Below, in pieces: positions 1 to 63,350 of a stretch of DNA of 64,000 nucleotides. The notes beneath the pieces were generated by a model that was not told the DNA's origin, did not search any database, and was given only the letters and a program-made list of their open reading frames with translations. Both the position numbers and the translations under genes were made by a program. Numbering within the stretch: position 1 is the stretch's first letter; each line of letters opens with the position of its first letter. The DNA comes from Octopus sinensis (Eukaryota). The DNA is taken from contig NC_043000.1 in NCBI RefSeq assembly GCF_006345805.1, positions 68,572,001 through 68,636,000 on the forward strand, read 5' to 3'.

Positions 1-545
1 GAAATTCGCTTTCGCCATAAATCAATAAATAAAGAGTTAATAGCTTTTAAAGTTATCAAATGTTTGGTAATTTTAGCCAATCGAAGGCCAAAGACATGTA
101 GGTGCCTGTTTCCATAGTAACAAGGCAAGCGTTGAAAAAGTGTTTACGAAAAGCCACGTTTTTTCAAACTGATATTTTACTTTGTGTTTTCCTTCTTAAA
201 CCTATCTTTTTCTGCTCTTAAAACTATAATGTGTGTCCTTTACTCCTTTTCGCATTGAATGCATATTGAATGTTTAAAACTACAAAATATGTGTTGTTTA
301 CTCGTATTGGGGATCATTTTCGCTTAATAAATGCTTAGGACAGATGCTATCGTCGCAATGTTGACATTTTTGTTTCGTCATCGTACGATTGCTGTCACTC
401 ACAAAAATCACTGCTTCCAAATCCTGTTTTCTGACTGGGTAAAAAGTATCAAACTTTAAACCTGTGTAACGTTAACAAAAAAGAACAAAACAAAATCTGG
501 AATAAGTGAATTAGGTCCAGAGATTCTGCGTGAAAAATTATGTCA
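1..545 (+). mobile_element. Non-autonomous DNA-transposon-like repeat (family F), partial copy carrying a CCAAT box and an X-box
   Basis: Colinear blocks shared with 31070-32540 and 47710-49230 (ttggtaattttagccaatcg, gtttccatagtaac, gcattgaatgcatattgaatg, tcctgttttctgactgggtaaaaa). Confidence 0.65.
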
Positions 546-689
546 ATACATTATGTTTGAAGATTTTCACTTGATTTTAAAATTTCAAAAAGTACAGCCA
601 AGGGAAAAAACGAACCCCCCCCCCCAAAAAAAAAATACGGTAAATATGAATATTGATTTCTTTCAAAATAATGTATGAATATAGAGAGT

Positions 690-10731: not shown

Positions 10732-11480
10732 GGCGGCGAGCTGGCAGAATTATTAGCACGCTGGACGAAATGCTTAGCAGTATTTCGCCTATCGCTACGT
10801 ACTAAGTTCAAATTCCGCCGAGGTCGACTTTGCCTTTCATTCTTTCGGGGTCGATAAATTAAGTACTAGTTGAGTACTGAGGTCGATGTAATCGACTAGT
10901 ACCCTCATCCAAAATTTCAAAACGGATTATTATTATTATTATTACTACTATTGTTATTATTAGACGTGCAAAATGCTTAACGGCATTTCACCCCTCTTTA
11001 CATTCTGAGTTGAAATTCCTCCGAGGTCGACTTTGCCTTTCATCATTTCGGGGTTGATAAATTAAGTACTAGTTGAGTACTGGGGTCGATGTAATCGACT
11101 TAATCCCTCACCCAAAATTTCAGGCCTTCTGCCTATAGTAGAAAAGATTATTATTATTATTAAAGGCGACGAGCTGGCAGAATCGTTAGCGCGCGGGACG
11201 AAATGCTTAGTGGTATTTCACCGTCGCTACGTTCTGACTTCAAATTCCGCCGAGGTCGACTTTGCCTTCCATCTTTTCGGGGTCGATAAATTAAGTGCCA
11301 GTTACGCACTGGAGTCGAGGTAATCGAGTGGTCCCTTTCCCCAAAATTTGAAGCCTTGTGCCAATAGTGGAAAAGATTATTAAGGCGGCGAGCTGACAGA
11401 ATCGTTAGCACACTGGATGAAATGGCTAACGGTTTTTTATTCAATCTTAACGTTCGGAGTTTAAATTCCGACGAGGTCAA
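10731..11480 (+). mobile_element. Head-to-tail array of four SINE family A copies separated by (TTA)n
   Basis: Copies at ~10731, ~10960 (5'-truncated), 11161 and 11381 (3'-truncated), each following a ttattatta run. Confidence 0.9.
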
Positions 11481-11762
11481 CACGGGTATTCACAATAGTT
11501 TTTTAACGGTTCTTGAAGAAATTTTGCTTTAGATATATGCATTGGTGTGTATTGCAAAAAAAAAAAACAGCTAAATTTCTTTCTTTAACATTTGACATAG
11601 TTCAACCTACACAAGTTAATGTGTGAAAAAACAAAATAGGAATTTCAAAGCTTCTATAAAACTAGTTTTTAAACATTAAATAGCTATGGGGGTCGGTCCA
11701 CAAGATTAAAATAATTATCGAAAGGGGTCCATAGATAAAAGATGGTTGAAAACTCATGTTTT
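11481..11762. mobile_element. hAT/Charlie-type MITE fragment
   Basis: Ends ggggtccatagataaaagatggttgaaaac; related to 55454-55675 and 63790-63952. Confidence 0.55.
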
Positions 11763-12176: not shown

Positions 12177-13890
12177 CACTGGGTAACAAAAAACATTTTT
12201 GTGTGTTGCCTGGAATTCTTAAGTGATTTTGCCTACTAGATTCAAAAAATTACGTCAGTTTTTCTCTATCAGGTCTAGTTTTCTTATTAGACCTGATAGA
12301 GTAAGTATTTTATTTATACAAGAGGCATATAATATGAATCAATAAAGCGGGTGTAACACAAAACAAAACAAAGTACAAATAAAAATTCAAAATTGAAAAT
12401 GTACATTGGCAAAGATTTTTGGCAGAAAATTCAAGGAATAAATTTAAGTTTCTTTGTGCACCGTGAATGTTGAGCAAATGGAGTATCTCGATTAAACACC
12501 AGCAATAGTCTGCCATCATCACAGTGCCCCAACATCCTTGGTACCGAATTTCTATCTCCTTGATGTCCTGATGGGATCGTTCGCCTAACATCGCCAAGAT
12601 TTTCAGGAAAACGATCAAGAAGACTAAAAGGATAATGCATTTTGATGCTCATATTCATGCCAATATCACGAAAAGTTGATATCAAGTTGGTAAGAAGATC
12701 TTTATAGTTTTCACTTCCGTCTTTCCCAAGGAAATTTTGCACTACTTCTGCAAAGACTAGCCAAGCTGATGCTTCATTTTCGCTCATCGTTTTCAGAAAT
12801 TTGTATCCTTCAAGAGCTTACGGATCTTTGGGCCATCAAAGATCCCTGCTTTAAGTTTTTCAGTCGTCAAGTCTGGAGATACGCTGCAGATATACTTGAA
12901 GCACTCCCCATTTTTGCCAAGAGCTTTGACGAATTGCTTGATCAATCCGAGTTTGATGTGTGAAGGGGGTAAATGATCTTAACTCGCTAAACTAAAGGCT
13001 CTTCCAATATATTGGCAACTCTACATGGAGCTATATTTGTTCGAGGCGGCCAATCTTTCTTAATATAGTGGTTTACTAGGTCCCTACTGTCCCACGTGCA
13101 AAGAAAGCATGGGTATTTGGTGTAACCATATTGCTGCCCCATGAGAAAATTCACCATCTTTAAGTCAACGCAGATGACCTATATATGATCATGATACAGT
13201 ATCTTCTCTAAAACCAACTTAATTTCTTCGTATTTTTCCTTCAGAGTTTTTGAGTGGCCGAGTGGGACAGAGCCATACACATTTCCATTGCGCAACCATA
13301 CACATTTTAAACTACGCTTAGAGTTGTTTATGAAAAGACGTCATTCTTCTGGCTTGTATTCCTCAATGCCAAGTTTATTAAGAAGCCCACTGACATCTCT
13401 GCAGCAAACCAACTTTCCTCATTTGGGAAGAAAGAAAGGAACTCTTCATGCTGACTCCGATAAAAGGTTATACGGACACCATTCTCAAGAAGATTCTTCT
13501 CTTTCGGTTGGGAAGCCAACAGTTCTACAGAACTTTTGGTGGTGGTGGTGGGGGTGGGGTTCAAGTCACGAACTAGACCATTCAGTTCTACCTGGGAGAT
13601 TAGCTGAGGTAAAGTCTCAGCTGAAAAGTCTTGATCTCTAGTGTCCTCTTCAGGTGATGAACCTTCTTTGATTGAGGATAAAGTTATCTGAAGCAAGACA
13701 TTGAAGACAGGAACAGGAAGCTCTTCACTGTGTGGAACCGGTCTAATAGCAGAGGCAAGATTTGGATAGACAAGCGTTTGTCGATTTTTCTGGTTAATAT
13801 CCTTCAAATTTAGGTTACAAAAATAGTAGTCGTCCCCGTGATTATAGGGCTCCCGCCATACCATTAGTATAGCAAACATCATACTTTCCT
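12177..13890 (-). mobile_element. Decayed DNA transposon, Chapaev3-like transposase pseudogene, 5'-truncated
   Basis: Motifs VWREPYNHGDDYYFC, YPNLASAIRPVPH, ELNGLVRDL..SVELLASQPKEKNLL, VICVDLKMVNFL, GYTKYPCFLC(T)WDSR, VQNFLG, MSIKMHY; terminus CACTGGGTAACAAAAAA at 12177; stops and frameshifts. The Chapaev3 assignment is recalled, not searched. Confidence 0.8.
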
Positions 13891-26566: not shown

Positions 26567-27807
26567 CAGGGTTGGACAAAATAATGGAAACACCTAGCAT
26601 CATAACATCATAATTTTGAAATATCTATAAAACCGCCAAAAGCTTATTTATTTTTATGCTTTTTGATTTATTATTAGTGTTGTTTAATATGTTTTGTTAA
26701 AATTGCTGTTTCTTTTCAGATATCATCAAAAAAAAGGTAATTAAAATTCATTAAAATGACAGATTTATTGGACTTTTAAAGAGGTCAAGTTATTGGTACT
26801 CGTATGGCAGGTGCTAGCGTAACGAAAGCAGCCGGAATGCTTGGTGTATCAAGCAGTAGTGTCTCGAAAGTAATGACAGCCTTTGAGAAAGAGGAAAAAT
26901 TCTCCACGTCGAAACAAAACTCCGGAAGAAAACCAAAAGTTGCAGATAGGGACCGTCGAACTCTTACGCGAATTGTTAGAAAGGATCACCAAAGTACAGC
27001 TCCCCAAATTACTGCAGAGCTTAATGACCACCCCGAGAACCCACTTTCCATAAAAACTGTTCGCCGGGAACTGCACAAAGCCGGATTTTACGGGAGGGCT
27101 GCAACCAGAAAACTACTACTTTCAAAAACAAACATTGCAACGTGTTGAGAGTGGAGTAAAAACCTACAGAATTGGTCCCTAGAGCAGTGGAAGAATGTTA
27201 TTTTCTCGGACGAGTCATCCTTTACCTTATTTCCGACTAGCGGCCGAGAATACGTGTGGAGACAGCTAAAAGAAGCATTTGGCCCAGACTGCCTTCTTCC
27301 AACTGTTAAACATGGAGGAGGATCTGTGATGATCATGGAGGTGGGGGGTTATATCTTGGAAATCCGCTGGTCCAATGGTTCCCCTTCATGGCAGAATTAA
27401 TAGTGAAGACTAAACATTTTATCTGATCAAATTTATCCTATAGTTGTGGAACTATATCTAGAGAGAAATGCAATCTTTCAGGATGATAATGCCTCAGTTC
27501 ACAGAGCTAGTGAAGTTGAACATCTTATCTGGCCACCACAGTCCTCAGATCTCATTGAACATTTATCATTTATAGTGCATTTTAGGAAAACAAGAAAGGA
27601 GTCGATATCCTTCACAATCATCACAAGAACTGGAGAGTGTTTTAGCTGAAGAATGGACAAAAATTCCTTTGGAAACACTTCAAACTTTGTACGAGTCCAT
27701 ACCTCGTGGAATTCAAGCTATAATTTCTGCCAAAGGCGGTCCTACCCCATATTATAATAAATTTGTTAAAAATTTTAAGGTGTTTCCATTATTTTGTCCA
27801 ACCCCTT
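26567..27807 (+). mobile_element. Tc1-like transposon, near full length (~1.24 kb), transposase disrupted
   Basis: TIRs cagggttggacaaaataatggaaacacct / aggtgtttccattattttgtccaaccc after TA; HTH region GRKPKVADRDRR, VIFSDESSF, TVKHGGGSVMI, QDDNASVHRA, WPPQSSDL; stops and deletions. Confidence 0.95.
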
Positions 27808-29790: not shown

Positions 29791-30905
29791 TAGCATCGTT
29801 AACATGCTACCTAGCTCCTTCTCTAATAGTAAAATACGTCATTTCATTCATTTTGTTATTTTCTTCTCAAATATATAAAACAAACATTTTAGTGTAGTTT
29901 ATATATCTAAAAATGCTAACAGGAACAAAAATCAATAAATTTTAAAAAATACAGAGGTTTATTGAAGAAAACTTTATTGAGTCAATTCACAAATATATTT
30001 ACAAAACTGCACTTCGTGGTGAGTATAATTTCATTTTATATTTCATATCATATACAGAAATTCCCACAGTCAAAACTGAAGAGAAAAAGAAGTCTTACTC
30101 AATAATAGACCGGAAAACATGAAGTGTATTGAAGCATATGATCTAATCCTGAAGACTCTTTCAAAACCACACGTCGCACCCTAGGTGTCTTAAAGAAGTT
30201 GTAAGTTTGCAACAATAACAATTTGCTGCCTACGATCGCTTTGTCATTTCTTTTTTCTCTTTTTCTCCGTCTTTTTTCCTCCCTGCTATAGTTCTCTTTC
30301 TTTCTCTTTATTCAACTTCTTTTCCTTCTTCCTCCATTCCTTACGCCTTTCTTCTTTTTTGTTCTCTTCTCTTTTCGTTTGAATGAACCATACGTCAATG
30401 CAATGCTGTTCTTTTAATTCTGCACAACATTCCTTCGGCCCATTCGACTTAGAGCAATATTTCACTTGTGAATCTCATGTTTTCCGTTCTATACTATATT
30501 GCATTCTCACTTTAACCGGTTTATTCATTTGATGGTTTATGAAGGTGAGGCAACGCTGACTTGTGAAGGCTTTGCTTCGCGGTGAGAGAAATCGAAAACT
30601 TACTCCACTGCCCTCGCTGTCTCCGAGAATTTTTCTTTTTATTAATTCTTTTTTTTTTTTTTTTTACAAGAGACGTTGTTTCACGAAAGTGACAGTCAAT
30701 ACATATGAATCAGTAGATAATCGACTTGCAGCTTTCTGCAAATTTTTGGCTTTGTACTTACGCTAGTAGTTATTTAGAGCTTGCCGTATTTTTCTAAGAG
30801 TTCAGTGAAATGTGCTGCACTTCACGCGTATAGTTTCCGTTTTATTATTATTATTGTTGTTGTTGTTGTTGTTATTGCTGCTTCTGCTTCTGCTGCTACT
30901 GCTGC

Positions 30906-30959
<54 letters not shown>

Positions 30960-31069
30960 TGTTGTTGTTGTTGTTGTTGTTGTTATACGTGTTATTTATG
31001 AGCTCTGTGAGTTATAGTTTGTGTTGAATTTTTTGAAGATTGATGTTCGTTTGCTTCGTTGGATTTTAT

Positions 31070-32540
31070 CAGTTCGAATTGATTTCATATTCAGCGTAAT
31101 GATACACCTTTATAGGCTAATTAATGACGTGAAAGTAATTTTCCTTATAAATCTATAAATAAAGAGTTATTAGCAATTAAAGTTTGAAACTTTTGGTAAT
31201 TTTAGTCAATCGTAAGCCACAGACACATTCATGACCGTTTTGATAGTAAGAAGCGGAACATGAAAACTCTTTTGTGTCTCAACGTACCTGTTGCCATAGT
31301 AACAAGCGAATCCGAGCAGTCTTTCAAAAGTCTTTTATCTGGGAGGAAACACGTGTTGACAAATTTGACGCTGTGTTCTGTGTGATTATGGCAGCAAGCT
31401 CCAATAACTTCGTTTCTGGAAATGTAGTGATGCTACTGTGTAAGGTTCAGCGCGCATGCGCAGAATGGGACTACTTCAGGTTGGCCACCGGAAGTCTTCC
31501 CCATGCGCATGTGCGGGAAACTGACCCCCTAAGGCACACTCACTCATTCATCCTCTCTGGGCATTTCAGCCATCGTGAACAGACGTGCATTTGGTAGTCT
31601 CTAATAACCACACCGACTTAGCCGCGGACGACATCGAACCACTTCAACCAACGAACAAGAAGCTGTACAACAGATTCGGCTGTCGTTTTCCCTTCAGAGA
31701 TACGTACACCATCACGATTAATAAACAAACTGCTGTCTTTCACCGGTAACCTGACTTCGTCTGTTATATCTAACTAAATTGTATGTGACGGGATCGGATC
31801 GACACCCTTTCAGTGTTACCGATACCAGATCCTGTTACAGAAACATTGAAAACAGAGGAGGATATTTTTAGAATTAAAGCCGAAAGTTAAATGTTTGTTT
31901 TTTAAACATACTTAGTTCACTCTTATTTTCATATATAACTGTGTACATCTCCTGGAACGTTGTCATTCTATGAGATTTTGCTGAAAAATTTTTTAAATTA
32001 ACACATTTATTTACTTGAAAGAAAATTACTGGAGAACTTTCATCTAATTCTTCTAAATATTTCTGTTAAAAATTGTAATGTGTGCATTGCATGTAACGTG
32101 TTGTTTATCGCATTTGCATTAAATGCATATTGAATGCTTAAATGTTTATTTACACATTTCTTTTTGTCATTGAGCATTGAGGTGGTTGTGTTGTGTGCTA
32201 AAAAAAACAGCTAAATAAGATTTTTTTAGATAAACCTTTTAAACTAACATAAACATTTGCATGACAATGTTGTCATACAAATATGACAACACGGGCTATT
32301 TTCAGGATGTTGACAACAAAATATGCAGTCACGCACAAAATGACAGCTTTGAAATCATGTTTCCTGACTGGGTGAAAATGGTCAAATTTTAAACCTCTAT
32401 AACTTTTTAAAAACATTTTTCTGGAAAAAATGAAATAACTCCAGCAATTCAGTTTGGGCAAGTGCATTATTGTGCCAAATTTTAAAATTTTCGGTAAACT
32501 TTAATTTTTGAAATGCTGGTAGCCAAACCGCTTCGTTTGT
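31070..32540 (+). mobile_element. Family F repeat, left part 31070-31364 and right part 31889-32540, with unrelated internal segment
   Basis: Both halves colinear with 47740-47917 and 48418-49230; right end tgctggtagccaaaccg is the inverse of cggtttggctgccagca at the left end of the 47.7-kb copy (putative TIR). Confidence 0.7.
31416..31520. promoter_or_regulatory. Housekeeping/bidirectional-type promoter motif cluster
   Basis: ACTACATTTCCAG on the reverse strand (31416-28, ZNF143-like), GCGCATGCGC (31452-61, NRF1), ACCGGAAGT (31487-95, ETS), ATGCGCATGTGC (31503-14, NRF1-like), GCGGGAAA (31513-20, E2F); locally CpG-rich. Confidence 0.55.
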
Positions 32541-46730: not shown

Positions 46731-47711
46731 TTTTGCATTGTAATGAGATTCAGTAATAATCTGAAGCTACATGCGTATTATTAAAGTGTCCAGTCACAAA
46801 TTACTTAGAACTAAATCGTTGTTCATACCATTATGTCCCTAAAACAAAAGAAAAATTAAATGTCTTTGGATAGGACAACGGTCTTTCGTAGGTAATATTT
46901 CACCGAGTGTGTATTTCCGGCAATGAAAGGAATTAGGACACGGAGAATAAAATTTTCTTGCCAGAGAAAATAAAAAAAAACGAAACATCTGCAGTGGATT
47001 TAAATTCATGACTCATGAGCAGGTAGTGCAATACCTAATACGCCCAGCTAATTGGCTTTTACAACGTTGTATAATCTAAAACATAAGTATCTAGACACTA
47101 CTTTCCGACAATATAGATAAGTGTTGGTATTAAAAGACAGGAATTTAGAATATGAAATCAACCAGTGAGAGACAAAAGATACAAGAACCAATCTATTGCT
47201 TCTTGTTTTTTATTTCTTTGAAACATTACCAACAACAACATTGATATTCAAATATACATCATCAGCAAAGTAAATCGAGCGAAACTTGATATGTGGATGT
47301 CACTATCGAATGAACAAGATTAATATTCTCATAAAAAAAAAAAACTCAAACAATATGAAAATAAAGTAAAAGTATTTAGCACCTGAAACTGAAGAAGAGT
47401 GGTCGGGAGCTTTCGTTCGTTATCCATGTTTCGGAGAACAAAGTAAATAACAATATAATAAAGTATGCTATTACATACAACGCATACAACACGCATGCGC
47501 GTGTGTGATACTCGCACGTACGCACATACATATACATGCATATGCACATGCACAAAGTTTTCAAGACAATATTAAGTGACTCAAGGTTGCAGATTAGAAT
47601 TTCATTGGATAAAGCACTCGTTTACATACACACATACATACATACATAAATACATACATACATATATACATGCATACTTACACACATACATACATTCATT
47701 AGAGATCTAGT

Positions 47712-49230
47712 CGGTTTGGCTGCCAGCACCAATTTTGTTCGAATTGACTTCATATTCAGTGTAATGATACACTTTTATAGGCTAATGAATGATGTGAAAA
47801 TTTTAAAATTTTGTTAATTTTAGCTAATTGTAGGCCTCAGGCACATTCATGCTTGTTTCCGTAGTAACAAGCAGAACGTGACAAATTTTTTGTCTGCGAG
47901 AAAACACGTGTTGACAAATATATTGAAACCACTTGTTTTACCTATCTGTTGACAATTGAGCATGTGAATTTATGTAGCGCAGGAGATATTGATTGAATGT
48001 ATTTTTAACTTTCGTTTTCAATGAACTGTTCAACAAAATATATGTATTTTGTTTTCAAATATTTAATTTGTAATGTGCTATTTGGTTTTTAGATAACTCT
48101 TAAGTTCGTGCTATCGCATTAAATGCACGTAGAACGCTTAAAACTACAAAATACGTGTTGTTTACTCATTTTTTTTTTTTTTTGTTAACCCAAAAGATGG
48201 TACCCACACTCAACAAGTGGAGAGTACATGGACCTCTGTGACGCGAGGTAATAAAAAATGCTGTGGCACTCACCGCTCTATGGTAGATTCGTATCCCTGA
48301 ATTTATATGGCACAGGAGATACGAGAATTGTGATTTCTTAGAGAAATTGATTGAATGTATTTCTAACTTTGGTTTTTAATTTTAAAAATCTTTTGTAATG
48401 TGTTGCTTATTACTTGCATAAATGCTTGTTTTTTAAGCATATTTTGCTCACTCTTTTATTTTCATATATAATATAATAAACATGTACATCTTTTAGAACA
48501 TTGTCATTTTATAAGATTTTGCTGGCAAATTTTTAAATTAACATAGACATTTATTTACATGGCGGCGAGCTGGCAGAAACGTTAGCACGCCGGGCGAAAT
48601 GCGCAGCCGTATTTTGTCTGCCGTTACGTTCTGAGTTCAAATTCCGCTGAGGTCGACTTTGCCTTTCATCCTTTCGGGGTCGATTAAATAAGTACCAGTT
48701 ACGCACTGGGTCAATGTAACCGACTTAATGCCTTTATCTGTCCTTGTTTGTCCCCTCTATGTTTAGCCCCCTGTGGGCAATAAAGAAGTATAAACATTTA
48801 CTTACATGAAAGAGAATTATCGGAGAACTTTCATCTAATTCTTCCAAATCTTTCTGCTAAAATTATATTGAAACCATTCGTGGAGTAAAATTGTAATGTG
48901 TGTATCGCATGTAATGTGTTGTTCATCGCATTTGCATTAAATGCATATTGAATGCTTAAAACTACTTGTTTACTTGGTTTGGTTTTTTTTTTTTTGTCAT
49001 TGGTTGTGAGGTGTACTAAAAATAACAGCTAAATAACGCATATTGATTGCTTCAAACTACAAAACACGTGTTGTTTACAAATATTGACAACACGTGCTAT
49101 TTTCAGGATATTGACGACTAAATGTGCTATTTTCAGGATATTGACGACAAAATGTGCAGTCAGACACAAAATGACATCTTCCAAATCCTGTTTCCTGACC
49201 GGGTAAAAAATGATCAAATTTTATACCTTT
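47712..49230 (+). mobile_element. Family F repeat copy
   Basis: Left end cggtttggctgccagca; X-box-like gtttccgtagtaac at 47855-68; colinear with the 31-32.5 kb halves. Confidence 0.7.
48561..48793 (+). mobile_element. SINE family A inserted in family F, with 14-bp TSD
   Basis: acatttatttacat (48547-60) / acatttacttacat (48794-807); the paralogous site near 32010 is empty. Confidence 0.92.
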
Positions 49231-49457
49231 TTCTTCTTCGCTCCCGCGTCTGCTATTGTCGAGGCCTACAAAAAATAGAGAAGCTATTACAAAAAGTCTA
49301 AATAAGTAAAGGAGAATCGGAAAGAAATTTTACTAGTTCAGTAAAACTGGAAAGACTGGAAAAAGAACTGTTGTACGAGGGAAAAATCCTATCTCTAGCA
49401 AAGCTGGTACTTTTCCATTACCATCATCTATATATATGTGTATGTATGTATATATGC

Positions 49458-57712: not shown

Positions 57713-58431
57713 AGACAGAGAGGTGGGGAGTGAAAGACGGACCGAAAGATATGGGGAGGGGAGAGGAGATGGAAAGGGAGAGACTGGGAAAGGTTATATG
57801 ACTGTGCTGCAACACAACTCTACAACTTCACCATCCTGATAATCACCATCACGATGACGACGACGACGACGACGACTATCACCTCTACCACCATCATCCC
57901 TTCACTTATTATTACCAGTACTACCACTACCACCTCTACAACTACCAACACTACCACCACTACCAGCCTCAACAATTACTACTACTACTACTACTACTTC
58001 CAACATCACTACCACAACTACCACCGACAACACCATTGCTACACCAACTATCACCACCATCACCAATAACGACACAAACACCACTAATAAGTTCCACCAC
58101 CACTACTATCACTACTACTAATCCCTTCAACAAGGGAGCTCCCGACATATTTGCTCGATCTGCTAGAAATAGGAGTTAATTCTCTGTCAAATCATACCGT
58201 CGGAAAAAGGGAAATAAAGATAAATTGGATCTTGTAAGCATTGATTATACAAAAACGAAAATGACAGGATAGTCGCGGCTGCAATATGGCATTGACTATA
58301 AGCCTGCTCGATCAGGATTGACCCGGGGTTAAACGATCAAGTACTCTCCATTACAACATCCGTCACTGCTTGATTTCATTACAGACCAGATGTTCTGGAG
58401 ATTTGTTTGTCCCCCTTCACTTTTCATTTGC

Positions 58432-58735
58432 AAAATGAGCCCCCTTTAATTTTGCTCAGATTGCTTTCAATTTTGGCGTATCGATGCAACTCTGAATTTT
58501 GATTACGATCAACCAATTACTTTATATCGTAAATTAAAGAATCTGATGTCATATGGAATCAAAGTTGGGAAATTTGGGTAATTTTAGCCAATCAACAGAC
58601 AGCGAGGCATTAACAGCTTGTTACCATGACCACCGCATATTGTGTTGTGTTCCACCCCGCGTGTTTTGTTTCAATAAAAATTTTTATTTATCAATTAGAA
58701 TTTTATTATAGATATTTTTCAATTGACTTAATATT
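58432..58735 (+). mobile_element. Non-autonomous repeat family G
   Basis: Matches 54880-55200; contains gggtaattttagccaatca, also seen in family F. Confidence 0.75.
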
Positions 58736-59271
58736 TTATATATTTTTCATACAAAGCAAAAGTTGTCTGCGATGTTTATACAGTTTCTTGGCATTATGAA
58801 GGTGAATGGAATATGTGAACTTAGTACTGATAATTTGACACATTATTTTTGAATTCTGCATGCAAAAACATAAGATACAGGTATTCTGTATCTTATGGCA
58901 TTGACTATAAGCCTGCTCGATCAGGAGTGACCTGGGGCTAAACAAGCTAGTACTCTCCATTACAACATCCGTCACTGCTTGATTTCATTACAGACCAGAT
59001 GTTCTGGAGATTTGTTTGTCCCCCACCCCCTCACTTCTCGTTGATACCTTCTCCAATACATACACGCCTATCATACATTTTCATGCTACGAAGTAAAACG
59101 AAAGAAAAAAAAAGAAATGGAAATAGATCTTACGTCGATTTCGACGATGTCCCAGTTGTTTGATTAACTGGAGTATCTACTTGGCTGGATGTGTGTGAAT
59201 GAGATTTTGTGCCGATACACTATATTGTCTTTTTTCTTTCGTATATTCTCCATCCTTCCACACACAAATAC

Positions 59272-59929: not shown

Positions 59930-62900
59930 GAGTTGGCAGATCGATTCAGACTGGACCACCCAGACACTCCAGCGTGGACCTGGGCAAGAAACGACGGGTC
60001 GTCCAGATCTTACATAGATAGAATCAGAACTAACTAGAAGAAGAAAGATAATACTTAGCCGTCCACAACACCATATCGTCAGCTACAGCGATCACAAATT
60101 AGTGACCTGTACGCTCGACATAGATAGCATGTGTAGACGAGGTACCGGTTACTGGAAGCTAAACAAGTTACTATTGGACTGTGAAGCCTACAGGAATCGG
60201 ATTAAACAATTAGTAATGAGGGCGTTAACCGGATCCATTATCAACAACAAATGGTGGTACGCACTGAAAAGAGCCATCAAATTACGTTTAGCAAAGAATT
60301 AGCTAGTGCTAGAAACAAAGTAGAAAAGGAAATAGTTAAGGCAATAGATGAGGCAATGAGGTCAGGCAGTACATCGAAAGTGTTAGCGGCGAGGTTGGCA
60401 CTCGACCAACATCTCAAAGCTAAACATGAAGGGTGCATTGTCAGGGCTAAGATCCGTGCAATGAGCCAGGAAGGGATCAACGCAGTCGGATGGGCCCGGG
60501 TGGTACAGGGCCAGCGTGGCAACAACTCAGCCATTCGAACTTTGACGGGCCCAAAGGGTCGATTAGTAAACGAACCCGAGGAGATGTGCAAGGTGTTTCA
60601 CGATCATTTCGCCCAGCTATTCGGGAGGAGCGGCGGACTGGAACGCGGGGAGAAGCTCGCAGACTTCCTAGCCGGTTCGCCACGTCTATCGAGGCCGGAC
60701 GCGGAATCTTGTGAGGCGCCGATCACAGCCAAAGAAATCGAGGATGTGTTGGCAGACTGCGGCGGGGACAAATCGCCGGGACTCGATGGTCTGCCTTACG
60801 AACTCTATAGTAGCATGCCAGACTTGCATGCGTGTACACCAACTGGCAGCAGAACTGGAGAATTCCTAAGTCTGTGAGCCGAGGGGTGGTAGCGCTGTTA
60901 AGAAAGGACCCAAACAAGGGGGATTTAATTGATAATTTTCGGCCCATCACTCTGCTTAACGCAGAGTTGAAGATTTTGGCCAAGGTCTTAGCAAAAAGGT
61001 TGGCGCGGATCGTGGGTGAACTTGTTGGCGAGGCGCAAACTTGCGCCATCCCTGGAAGGACCATCCACGACAATCTCCACTTTCTACGCTATGCCTTAGA
61101 AAGGGTAAATAGGATTCCTGGCAAGGATGGGGCTATGGTCCACTTGGACCAATCGAAAGCGTTCGATAGGGTGGGCCATCAGTATCTGGCGGCGGTCCTC
61201 ACGGTGGTTGGCTTCGGCCCGACCTTCAGCGGATGGATCAACGCTTTATACAGCAACATCGAATCGGTAGTTCGGGTGAATGGTTTCTTTTCGGAGCCGT
61301 TCCGCATTGAACGTTCGGTACATCAAGAGTGTCCTCTCTCCCCGCTTCTCTACGTTTTGGCCCTCGAGCCGTTGCTGAGGAGGTTGGAAACTATGAGGGG
61401 CACTCCGCAAGATCTAGGGTGCGGAAAGTCAGCTTCGGCGTATGCGGACGACATCACCGTCATCGTATCCCAAGTCGAGCACCTACAGTAGGTGGGTGAG
61501 GCCTTAAGGGACTACGAAGCGGTGGCAGGAGCGAAAGTCAACCGGGATAAATCGGTCGGCTTGCAACTCGGCACCTGGAGGGGCAAATCGATGTCTTCCG
61601 ACAGCGTCGTAGGACGTTGGACGGAAGGGCCGGTGAAAATGCTTGGAATCTGATTAGGTCCAGATCTCCAGATAGAGAAGAATTGGAGCGAGGTGGCGAG
61701 AAAGGTGGCTCTCCTAACTCAGACCTGGTCTGAGCGGAAGCTGTCCTTGAAAGGGAGGGCGGAGGTTGCAGCGGTGTTTATCGCCTCTGTAATCACTTAC
61801 TGCCTGACCGTCGTGCCTTGCCCCGATTCGTGGTTGAACAAGCTGGAACGCATGCTCTTTCGCTTTTTGTGGAGGAGCAGCAGACCTCTTGTAAGGCGCT
61901 CTATTTGCTGCCAAAAGCCGCTGAAGGGTGGGTTAGGGATACCGTGGCTAAAAATGCGCAGACATGCACTCAGGCTTAGGCACCTCTGGCTTTACCTGGA
62001 CGGTGAGCAGGTGTGGTCTTCGTTCGTCAAGCTGTTATTTCCACAGTTCACATCGTTTACCAAACTGAACCCATGGATCAAGTGTAGACCGAGGTTGGGC
62101 ATGTGGCATGTAGAGTGCCATCAGGCACTCGTGCTTCTCTCCCAGTCGGGCAAAGCCGGTGGCGGGGGTACTACCTCGTTCTTCTATAGAGGGTTAGTAG
62201 AGTTTAAGTGTGACGACGTCCTGGGAGAAAACCTGGGCTTCGACGAAAATCAACTGGCCAGCCTGTTCCAAAGGACATTCGGTCCGGGGCCTATGGATAA
62301 TTACCAAAAGTCCCTGGCCTGGCAATGTTACAGAGGAGCTTTACCGGTTCGAGATTAGCTCTTTAGACATGGGTGTGCACCTTCGCCGGTTTGTGCAAGA
62401 TGTGAGGGGGACAGTGAAACTGTCCTGCACGCGATTGTGCAATACCCCAAGGTGACTGAACTCTGGGCTTATGTCAAACACCTGCTGTCGCATTCGAGAA
62501 GAGTACAACTGTCGAGCGAATCTGTAATTAAGATAGTTCTGCCGATCTCCCTGAATAGGGAGGAGCGAGCCTGTTTTCTCTCGGTAGTTGCTATGGCGAA
62601 AGAAGTAGTATGAAAGGCGAGAGTGAAAGGAATTGCAACAGGCATGTTTATCTCCAGTCTCGAGCTAATCGACTTCTTCGTTTTCCACATGAAACGGAAA
62701 ATAAGGCTGGAGAAGAAATGCCTGTCGCAAAGTGTGTTTCGTAAAAGATGGAAGTATATAGCAAGTATGTTGCGAGTGAAAGAACCTGTTTAATCGAGAA
62801 AGTAAAAAAGGAGAAAGCGAAGTCTTCAGTGTGAGTATGTGGTTTATGGGGTCAACCGCGTCCTCCGCTTCATTTTTTGTTATTCACTCATTCCCATTTA

Positions 62901-63021
62901 ATTGTATATATTTTAACTGTTTGTTTAACTGTTTGTTTGTTTAACGTTTCGTCTCATTCGATACCCTGACCCCAACGTTTGTTTTGTCCCCCTCTTTTTC
63001 TCAACCTTATGGTGAATACAG

Positions 63022-63025
<4 letters not shown>
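59930..63025 (+). mobile_element. Tx1/L1-like LINE, 5'-truncated in the APE domain, ORF2 broken by stops and frameshifts
   Basis: APE end (WTW...SRSYIDRI, SDHKLV, YWKLN); RT (KSPGLDGLPYE, NFRPITLLNAELKILAK, LDQSKAFDRV, QECPLSPLLY, YADD); RPLKGGLG-type motif QKPLKGGLGIP; C-terminal CARC..ETVLHA; 3'UTR. Confidence 0.95.
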
Positions 63026-63073
<48 letters not shown>

Positions 63074-63137
63074 TCTCTCTCTCTCTCTGCCGTGAGCTCA
63101 ATGACATCAGACAGCTAAGTGATATATTCCTTTCTAA

Positions 63138-63350
63138 AGGCAGCGAGCTGGCAGAAACGTTAGCACGACAGGCAAATTGCTTAGCGGTATTTCGGCTGAC
63201 TTTACGTTCTGAGTTCAAATTCCGCCGAGGTCGACTTGGTCTTTCAGTCTTTTGGAGTCCATAAATTAAGTACCAGTTGCGTACTGGGGTCGCTGTAATC
63301 GACTGGCCCCCTCCTCCCAAATTTCGGGCCTTGTGCCTAGAGTAGAAAAG
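63138..63350 (+). mobile_element. SINE family A
   Basis: ggcagcgagctggcagaaacgttagcac head to agtagaaaagga tail. Confidence 0.9.

What the first reader, a model, noticed from the sequence alone, without database searches (positions are those of the whole stretch)
31070..32540. Promoter-like motif cluster carried as cargo between the two halves of a transposon
Seen in the sequence: family F left (to cacgtgttgacaaat, 31364) and right (from 31889) halves are colinear with the 47.7-49.2 kb copy. The ~520 bp between them is unrelated, CpG-rich DNA with ZNF143-like, NRF1, ETS, NRF1-like and E2F motifs packed into 105 bp, plus a possible donor CG|gtaacc at 31746. Established knowledge: this motif combination typifies housekeeping and bidirectional promoters; Pack-MULEs and Helitrons capture host fragments. 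Inference: either a Pack-type element captured a host promoter and 5' exon, or a real promoter here has been bracketed by TE halves.
Basis: partly seen in the sequence, partly recalled or inferred. Interest (0 to 1): 0.7.

Follow-up and report, generated by a model that had tools for sequence, protein, structure and literature searches.

The report
Transposon copy carrying promoter-like foreign DNA
One copy of a small cut-and-paste transposon in this cephalopod-like genome has had its middle replaced by about 520 bp of unrelated DNA that looks like a housekeeping-gene promoter; such capture is already known in animals, and I could not show where this DNA came from or whether it is active.

Summary
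Both arms are equally diverged from the copy at 47.7-49.2 kb (84.6% left, 86.8% and 82.7% right). The right end carries a clean 17-bp TIR that matches the left end of copy 2. A candidate 8-bp target-site duplication (TTCGTTTG, p about 0.01) abuts both ends.

The 523 bp between the arms (31365-31887) matches nothing else in the 64 kb. It holds a motif cluster in 69 bp: a perfect NRF1 palindrome, a second NRF1-like site, CCGGAAGT and TTTCCCGC. None of 300 dinucleotide shuffles of the window reproduced this cluster. A strand-specific 272-nt ATG-free stretch follows it.

- "CpG-rich" is overstated (o/e 0.97 against 0.75 for the window).
- The ZNF143 match is poor.
- The splice donor is no better than chance.

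The best reading is a hAT-like "Pack-TIR": a transposon whose interior was refilled from a host promoter and first exon by template-switch repair. It is not a MULE or a Helitron.

No cephalopod genome was reachable with these tools, so the source locus, the copy number and any activity are untested. Retention of the autonomous element's own promoter is not excluded. This is at most a new member of a known kind, of moderate-to-low interest.

The parts
31046..31053 (.). Candidate left target-site duplication TTCGTTTG
   Evidence: This is the longest common substring between the 32-nt windows around the two inferred ends. An 8-mer or longer appears in 1.07% of random genomic window pairs and in 0.67% of shuffles.
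31054..31364 (+). F left arm. Its terminal inverted repeat is degenerate (about 31054-31070). It carries a copy-1-specific ~62-bp local duplication at about 31263-31325.
   Evidence: 84.6% identity to copy 2 (47732-47893) and 77% to copy 3 (1-124). The junction with the insert can be placed anywhere in 31364-31369.
31365..31887 (+). Foreign insert ('cargo'): promoter-like cluster, then an ATG-free leader, a donor-like GT, and about 140 bp of further unique DNA
   Evidence: No other copy in the window. No Rfam or tRNA hit. GC 46%, CpG o/e 0.97.
31452..31520 (.). Motif cluster: NRF1 palindrome 31452-31461, ETS CCGGAAGT 31488-31495, NRF1-like 31505-31514, E2F TTTCCCGC (- strand) 31513-31520
   Evidence: NRF1-type sites: 3 observed against 0.33 expected. 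Joint cluster: 0 of 300 shuffles.
31510..31782 (+). ATG-free stretch on the + strand (putative untranslated first exon and the start of an intron)
   Evidence: 272 nt without ATG, against 3.5 expected from local composition. The - strand has 8 ATGs in the same span. 11.5% of window bases lie in gaps that long. No RNA structure signal (z = -0.11).
31746..31747 (+). Donor-like GT (CCG|GTAACC)
   Evidence: Top 3.2% of + strand GT sites, which means about one per 500 bp; weak evidence.
31888..32531 (+). F right arm, ending in the 17-bp TIR at 32514-32530 (- strand: CGGTTTGGCTACCAGCA)
   Evidence: 86.8% and 82.7% identity to copy 2, 73% to copy 3. The TIR matches the copy 2 left end at 16 of 17 positions. 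The pattern occurs only at these two places in the window, against 0.13 expected.
32532..32539 (.). Candidate right target-site duplication TTCGTTTG
47712..49238 (+). F copy 2 (the comparison copy). It has a left TIR at 47712-47728 and a patchwork interior at 47920-48418. It also carries a SINE-like insertion at 48560-48793, and its right end is truncated.
1..605 (+). F copy 3. This short derivative is cut by the window start. It joins the left arm directly to the right arm (equivalent to copy 1 position ~32018) with no middle segment.

Best explanation
Window 31054-32531 is one non-autonomous, hAT-like TIR DNA transposon of family F. Its interior was replaced by about 520 bp copied from elsewhere in the host genome. 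The copied piece is a contiguous fragment with the anatomy of a TATA-less housekeeping promoter (paired NRF1 sites, ETS, E2F), an untranslated first exon, and the start of its intron.

The likely mechanism is repair of a double-strand break or excision gap inside the element. During repair, the polymerase switched template from the sister or homologous F copy to unrelated DNA and back. This is the gap-filling or FoSTeS-type 'Pack-TIR' transduplication.

What is shown:
- single-element architecture;
- the insert is foreign relative to the other F copies;
- the motif cluster is non-random.

What is inferred:
- the host-promoter origin;
- the repair mechanism;
- any transcriptional activity at this site.
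For: - The arms are colinear, in the same orientation, and equally diverged from copy 2 (84.6% left; 86.8% and 82.7% right), so they are the same age.
- A 17-bp TIR is shared between the copy 1 right end and the copy 2 left end, and it occurs nowhere else in the window.
- The 8-bp direct repeat TTCGTTTG abuts both ends (p about 0.01). This indicates a single transposition event.
- Copy 3 joins the left arm to the right arm with no middle, and copy 2 has a different interior, so the insert is not shared F sequence.
- Copy 2's interior is itself a patchwork. Duplicated F segments bracket a unique 116-bp patch of 47% GC, as expected for a family repaired by template switching.
- The insert has no second copy in the window.
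- The motif cluster is far beyond chance.
- A strand-specific ATG-free leader follows the cluster.
- There is precedent in animals: 370 Pack-TIRs in 100 genomes, including a frog hAT that captured a 291-bp 5'UTR (PMC8277862).
Against: - No parental locus was found. None lies within about 31 kb on either side, whereas 57% of animal Pack-TIRs are within 15 kb of their parent.
- The left TIR of copy 1 is degenerate, so the exact left terminus, and therefore the TSD, rests on one 8-mer.
- With only three F copies, the canonical F interior is unknown. 'Foreign' therefore means 'not shared with copies 2 and 3', not 'absent from every F element'.
- CpG enrichment is modest, the ZNF143 site is poor and the donor is at chance level.
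- No host exon was recognised downstream in the window (a weak negative).
Confidence: 0.45

Rival explanations
1. Ds-like deletion derivative. The insert is the autonomous F element's own promoter and untranslated leader, retained next to the left subterminal region when the transposase gene was deleted. Nothing was captured from the host.
For: The position fits. The promoter-like cluster begins about 400 bp from the left end, immediately after the subterminal repeat region, and points inward on the + strand. An ATG-free leader and a donor-like site follow it. This resembles the layout of autonomous hAT elements such as maize Ac, which has a TATA-less promoter and a long GC-rich leader (established knowledge, recalled, not tested here). 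Non-autonomous copies commonly differ in how much interior they retain.
Against: Copies 2 and 3 both lose homology to copy 1 within a few bases of the same left point (about 31364-31372). If the insert were ancestral, this would need two independent deletions at the same point, against one gain under capture. No F-flanked transposase ORF exists in the window, and the TIR pattern occurs only at the two known ends. Paired perfect NRF1 sites with ETS and E2F are typical of host housekeeping promoters (established knowledge).
Confidence: 0.2
2. Nested or recombined fragment of a different, unrecognised repeat family that carries its own internal promoter (for example an LTR, a LINE 5' region or another DNA transposon).
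For: About two thirds of an octopus genome is repeat and many families are unclassified (PMC13282606). TE promoters can be rich in NRF1 or ETS-type sites (established knowledge). AAAT is present at both junctions (31361-31364 and 31889-31892) and could be a short TSD (sequence).
Against: There is no second copy in a 64-kb window that is dense in repeats. The segment has no terminal repeats and no poly(A) or poly(T) at either end. It has no coding capacity or Pfam/Rfam signal. The F sequence on the two sides of the insert is not contiguous in the nearest relative, where it lies 500 bp apart in copy 2, so this is a replacement rather than a simple insertion. A 4-nt A/T-rich match is not significant.
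Confidence: 0.13
3. A working promoter at this very site. Whatever its origin, the segment fires here and drives a host or chimeric transcript whose first intron begins at 31746 and runs through the F right arm. The extreme version is a resident promoter bracketed by two independent F half-insertions.
For: The core motifs are intact (a perfect NRF1 palindrome). The ATG-free leader is specific to the + strand. In humans a majority of exon-derived Pack-TIRs are transcribed (PMC8277862).
Against: No recognisable host exon lies downstream on the + strand in 32 kb, only TE debris. The donor is at chance level. The two-half-insertion version conflicts with the equal arm divergence, the terminal TIR and the TSD around the whole unit. 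No expression or chromatin data were available.
Confidence: 0.15
4. Filler DNA of no regulatory history, in which the motif cluster is a coincidence.
For: The motif set was chosen after seeing the sequence. ETS and E2F are individually at chance frequency. CpG o/e is unremarkable.
Against: Two NRF1-type 10-mers lie 53 bp apart when 0.33 are expected in the whole 64 kb. Co-location with ETS and E2F was never seen in 300 shuffles.
Confidence: 0.07

Closest known systems
Pack-TIRs of animals (Tan et al. 2021, Nat Commun, PMC8277862), e.g. frog hAT-N8_XT carrying 291 bp of the CAPSL 5'UTR
   Same: Two parts of one TIR transposon, in the same orientation, flank a few hundred bp of non-TE DNA. The cargo is 5'-end gene sequence. 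There is evidence of template-switch repair in the family. The TIR and TSD are hAT-type.
   Different: The parental copy is not identified and does not lie nearby. The left TIR is degenerate. The copy number is unknown. No cephalopod or mollusc case is mentioned in that paper's main text.
Pack-MULEs of plants
   Same: A transposon carrying captured host gene fragments, with a bias towards GC-rich 5' regions.
   Different: MULEs have long TIRs (about 100 bp or more) and 9-11 bp TSDs. This element has a 17-bp TIR and a candidate 8-bp TSD.
Helitron gene and promoter capture (maize, bats)
   Same: Dispersal of host promoters and first exons by a DNA transposon.
   Different: Helitrons lack TIRs and TSDs and end in a 3' hairpin plus CTRR. 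This element has a TIR and a TSD.
Ac/Ds-type internal-deletion derivatives of hAT elements
   Same: Retained termini and subterminal repeats, variable interiors among copies, 8-bp TSD. A promoter and leader lying just inside the 5' subterminal region would match the layout.
   Different: No autonomous F element or transposase is known here. The insert is absent from the other copies, and the breakpoint pattern favours gain over repeated loss.

Membership tests
Pack-TIR (criteria of Tan et al. 2021) | Internal sequence flanked by two parts of the same TIR element, colinear and in the same orientation | tested here: met
   both arms align colinearly to copy 2 at 83-87% identity.
Pack-TIR (criteria of Tan et al. 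2021) | Internal sequence of 100-5000 bp | tested here: met
   523 bp (31365-31887).
Pack-TIR (criteria of Tan et al. 2021) | Both flanks cover at least 10 bp of the consensus termini | tested here: inconclusive
   The right end has the full 17-bp TIR. The left end is degenerate, at about 8-10 of 17-19 positions depending on gaps.
Pack-TIR (criteria of Tan et al. 2021) | A unique parental copy at >=90% identity elsewhere, of similar length, not flanked by TEs | not testable with these tools
   None in the 64-kb window. No cephalopod genome is reachable: protein-proxy searches and exact-pattern scans all came back empty.
Pack-TIR (criteria of Tan et al. 2021) | Internal sequence is not itself a transposable element | tested here: inconclusive
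   No match to any other repeat in the window and no Rfam or Pfam signal. No species repeat library was available.
hAT superfamily (non-autonomous member) | 8-bp target-site duplication | tested here: met
   TTCGTTTG at 31046-31053 and 32532-32539, p about 0.01. It rests on a single copy.
hAT superfamily (non-autonomous member) | Short terminal inverted repeats (about 10-25 bp) | tested here: met
   17-bp TIR, 16 of 17 between the copy 2 left end and the copy 1 right end.
hAT superfamily (non-autonomous member) | An autonomous relative encoding a hAT (DDE, BED or dimerisation domain) transposase with the same termini | not testable with these tools
   No such element in the window. The TIR pattern occurs only at the two known ends.
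Pack-MULE | Long TIRs and a 9-11 bp TSD | tested here: not met
   17-bp TIR and an 8-bp candidate TSD.
Helitron | No TIR, no TSD, 5'-TC ... CTRR-3' ends with a 3' hairpin | tested here: not met
   The element has a TIR and a flanking direct repeat.
Housekeeping (NRF1/ETS-type) RNA polymerase II promoter | Cluster of NRF1, ETS and E2F-type sites within about 100 bp | tested here: met
Housekeeping (NRF1/ETS-type) RNA polymerase II promoter | CpG-island context | tested here: not met
   CpG o/e is 0.97 for the insert and 0.67 for the core, at 46% GC. The criterion is vertebrate-centred and may not apply to a cephalopod.
Housekeeping (NRF1/ETS-type) RNA polymerase II promoter | Mapped transcription start, open chromatin, spliced transcript | not testable with these tools
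   No expression or chromatin data were accessible.

The most novel reading that the evidence does not exclude
F-with-cargo is not a one-off. It is a mobilised, multicopy Pack-hAT family that has spread an intact NRF1/ETS/E2F housekeeping promoter and leader to many sites in a cephalopod genome, seeding new transcription start sites and chimeric first exons. That would be transposon-driven promoter dispersal in a lineage noted for large-scale regulatory reorganisation.
Probability: 0.06. Interest if true: 0.7.

Novelty: new member of a known kind. Interest (0 to 1): 0.33.

Why it matters
If the source-gene origin is confirmed, this would be a documented case of a TIR transposon duplicating a promoter plus first exon in a cephalopod. 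My literature searches found no such report for this group: there is no octopus or mollusc mention in the animal Pack-TIR survey, and no capture is discussed in the 2026 O. vulgaris repeat annotation. Promoter duplication by transposons is one route to new transcription units and chimeric genes. Octopus genomes are about two thirds repeat, with a TIR expansion wave at roughly the divergence seen between these F copies. As a single, unvalidated copy, however, this is an example of a known process rather than a new one.

Tried and rejected
1. Reaching the source genome or related octopods.
   - An exact look-up of ten window ORFs in the 15-billion-protein collection found none.
   - A homology search with the ORF spanning the arm/insert junction found no candidates.
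   - A search with the LINE-like ORF 1.3 kb downstream found nothing.
   - A search with the RT domain ORF returned only about 50%-identical RTs from unrelated ENA contigs, plus one 71% hit on a 767-bp contig.
2. Exact-pattern scans.
   - Insert sequences gave zero hits in JGI metagenomes and in GTDB genomes.
   - An F block gave zero hits in metagenomes.
   - The 17-mer TIR in GTDB genomes gave at least 120 bacterial hits. That is the number expected by chance for a 17-mer in 596 Gb, so these hits are irrelevant.
3. Known RNA genes: no Rfam hit at gathering threshold across the window, none meaningful in permissive mode over the element, no tRNA-like sequence, and no excess RNA structure in the putative exon.
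I listed the filtered stop-to-stop segments downstream on the + strand. By eye they contain only TE and microsatellite translations, so I did not spend calls on them.
5. Rejected: the idea of two independent F half-insertions (arm ages, TIR, TSD).
6. Rejected: the MULE and Helitron labels (TIR and TSD type).
7. Looked for a curated octopus repeat library in the supplement of PMC13282606. The supplement is only a 6-kb document with no sequences.
8. A full-text search for the SINE sequence to fix the taxon found nothing.

Full report
**What is there**

The window is repeat-dense, low-GC eukaryotic DNA. It contains microsatellites, SINE-like units, LINE reverse-transcriptase fragments and a Tc1/mariner fragment.

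- 31072-31364 is colinear with 47737-47919.
- 31888-32408 is colinear with 48419-48561 plus 48794-49238. In the 48-kb copy, a 233-bp SINE-like insertion interrupts this arm.
- A third, shorter copy lies at the window start (1-~605). It joins the left arm directly to the right arm, at the equivalent of copy 1 position ~32018.
- Sensitive profile searches found two more fragments at 58.45 kb (+) and 55.18 kb (-). These belong to a related but distinct MITE-like family.

**F is a TIR transposon and copy 1 is one element**

- The right end of copy 1 (32514-32530, - strand) and the left end of copy 2 (47712-47728) share the 17-mer CGGTTTGGCTRCCAGCA at 16 of 17 positions. The pattern occurs nowhere else in the window, even with three mismatches allowed.
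- The octamer TTCGTTTG lies immediately outside both inferred ends of copy 1, at 31046-31053 and 32532-32539. A shared 8-mer between two such 32-nt windows arises in about 1% of random genomic pairs and in 0.7% of shuffles.
- The arms are equally diverged from copy 2: 84.6% on the left, 86.8% and 82.7% on the right.

Together these results indicate a single insertion of a non-autonomous element with a short TIR and an 8-bp target-site duplication. One caveat applies: the left TIR of copy 1 is degenerate, so the left terminus and the TSD rest on one 8-mer.

The pairwise divergence of about 15% between copies 1 and 2 fits the TIR expansion wave reported for Octopus at a Jukes-Cantor distance of about 0.09 from consensus (PMC13282606). 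This is an inference.

**The middle segment**

The 523 bp at 31365-31887 matches nothing else in the window by blastn or nhmmer. The only hit is its own short palindrome, formed by the two NRF1-type sites. It is not shared with copy 2, whose 500-bp interior is built from duplicated F pieces, nor with copy 3, which has no interior.

It contains no Rfam family, no tRNA-like sequence, no meaningful ORF and no excess RNA structure.

The motifs, against chance:
- It contains the only perfect GCGCATGCGC in 64 kb.
- A second, one-mismatch copy lies 53 bp away. Window-wide there are three hits at <=1 mismatch against 0.33 expected, and 0 of 100 shuffles reach three.
- CCGGAAGT and TTTCCCGC are each at chance frequency across the window. 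Both fall between and next to the NRF1 sites.
- All four sites lie within 69 bp (31452-31520).
- None of 300 dinucleotide shuffles of the window produced three motif classes within 105 bp. The motif set was chosen post hoc.

Immediately after the cluster, the + strand is free of ATG for 272 nt. About 3.5 ATGs are expected from local composition, and the - strand has eight in the same span. This behaviour is typical of 5' leaders. However, 11.5% of the window lies in gaps that long, so it is supportive only.

- CpG o/e is 0.97 against 0.75 for the window, and 0.67 in the motif core.
- The ZNF143 resemblance is loose.
- The donor CCG|GTAACC ranks with about one site per 500 bp per strand.

**How it most likely arose**

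The F sequence on the two sides of the insert is not contiguous in the nearest relative; the two sides lie 500 bp apart in copy 2. The insert therefore replaces interior F sequence rather than simply interrupting it.

Copy 2's interior is also a patchwork. A duplicated F segment (47965-48022, about equal to 48298-48380) brackets a unique 116-bp patch of 47% GC, in surroundings of about 27% GC.

Variable, filler-containing interiors between conserved termini are the signature of double-strand-gap repair with template switching. Tan et al. infer this mechanism for 370 'Pack-TIRs' in 100 animal genomes, including a frog hAT element that captured 291 bp of a 5'UTR (PMC8277862).

I therefore favour this reading: an F element acquired a contiguous piece of a host gene's 5' end (promoter, untranslated first exon and the first ~140 bp of intron) by such repair. 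This happened either at this site or before the element transposed here.

**What limits the claim**

The defining test for capture is a unique parental locus without F flanks, and I could not run it. Every route to cephalopod genomic data failed: exact and homology protein look-ups, and exact-pattern scans of metagenome and prokaryote collections.

No parent lies within about 31 kb on either side, whereas 57% of animal Pack-TIRs are within 15 kb of theirs. This mildly disfavours in-situ gap filling but does not exclude distant or inter-chromosomal capture.

The main rival is that the segment is the autonomous F element's own promoter and leader, retained in a Ds-like deletion derivative. Its position just inside the left subterminal region, and its inward orientation, fit this. 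Against it, copies 2 and 3 both lose homology at the same left point, which favours one gain over two identical losses. No transposase-bearing F is visible in the window.

A nested unknown repeat and a chance motif cluster are less likely, for the reasons given under the rival explanations.

Whether the segment fires here is unknown. I saw no recognisable host exon downstream on the + strand in 32 kb. That is a weak negative.

**Verdict**

- The closest known kind is the animal Pack-TIR, here of hAT type. Membership is provisional because the parental-copy criterion is untested and the left terminus is degenerate.
- On novelty, this is at most a new member of a known kind. My literature searches found no such case reported for this taxon.
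- Interest is moderate to low unless a genome-wide search shows that the cargo-bearing element has amplified.

Noticed in passing
window 47920-48418: The interior of F copy 2 is a patchwork. A duplicated F segment (47965-48022, about equal to 48298-48380, 87-90% identity) brackets a unique 116-bp patch (48185-48300) of 47% GC, in surroundings of about 27% GC. This may be a second, smaller filler capture in the same family.
   Followed up: partly
window 48560-48793; also about 1610-1944, 11160-11483 and 62925-63320: A SINE-like unit (ggcgagctggcagaaacgttagcac...) is inserted in the right arm of F copy 2. ORF translations with the same RPRRNLNSER-type motif recur at several other places, so this is an abundant family in the window.
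   Followed up: no
window 58430-58960 (+) and 55200-54720 (-): Two copies of a related MITE-like family share the ggtaattttagccaatc core with F but have different ends and interiors. The 58.4-kb copy sits between direct repeats of tacagaccagatgttctggagatttgtttgtccccc (58380 and 58981).
   Followed up: partly
window 60251-62358 (+): LINE-type element fragment with a reverse-transcriptase domain, GC 49-55%. Its nearest database relatives are only about 50% identical (one at 71%) and all come from ENA metagenome contigs.
   Followed up: partly
window 26804-27148 (+): Tc1/mariner transposase N-terminal fragment (PF01498 HTH_Tnp_Tc3_2, E = 8e-13).
   Followed up: partly
window 12310-13882 (-): A cluster of transposase-looking ORFs (for example ...KYPCFLCTWDSRD...) with no Pfam match at E <= 0.01 for the two ORFs tested.
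   Followed up: partly
window 47491-47500: The third NRF1-like 10-mer (ACGCATGCGC) lies about 210 bp upstream of the left TIR of F copy 2, within low-complexity ACGC/CA DNA. It is probably coincidental.
   Followed up: no
window 30840-30985: A long (TTG/CTG)n microsatellite lies directly upstream of F copy 1. Similar tracts occur at 15.5 kb and 37.3 kb.
   Followed up: no
window 31263-31325: A copy-1-specific ~62-bp local duplication of the 'tagtaaSaagc' block in the left arm of F. It is absent from copies 2 and 3.
   Followed up: partly
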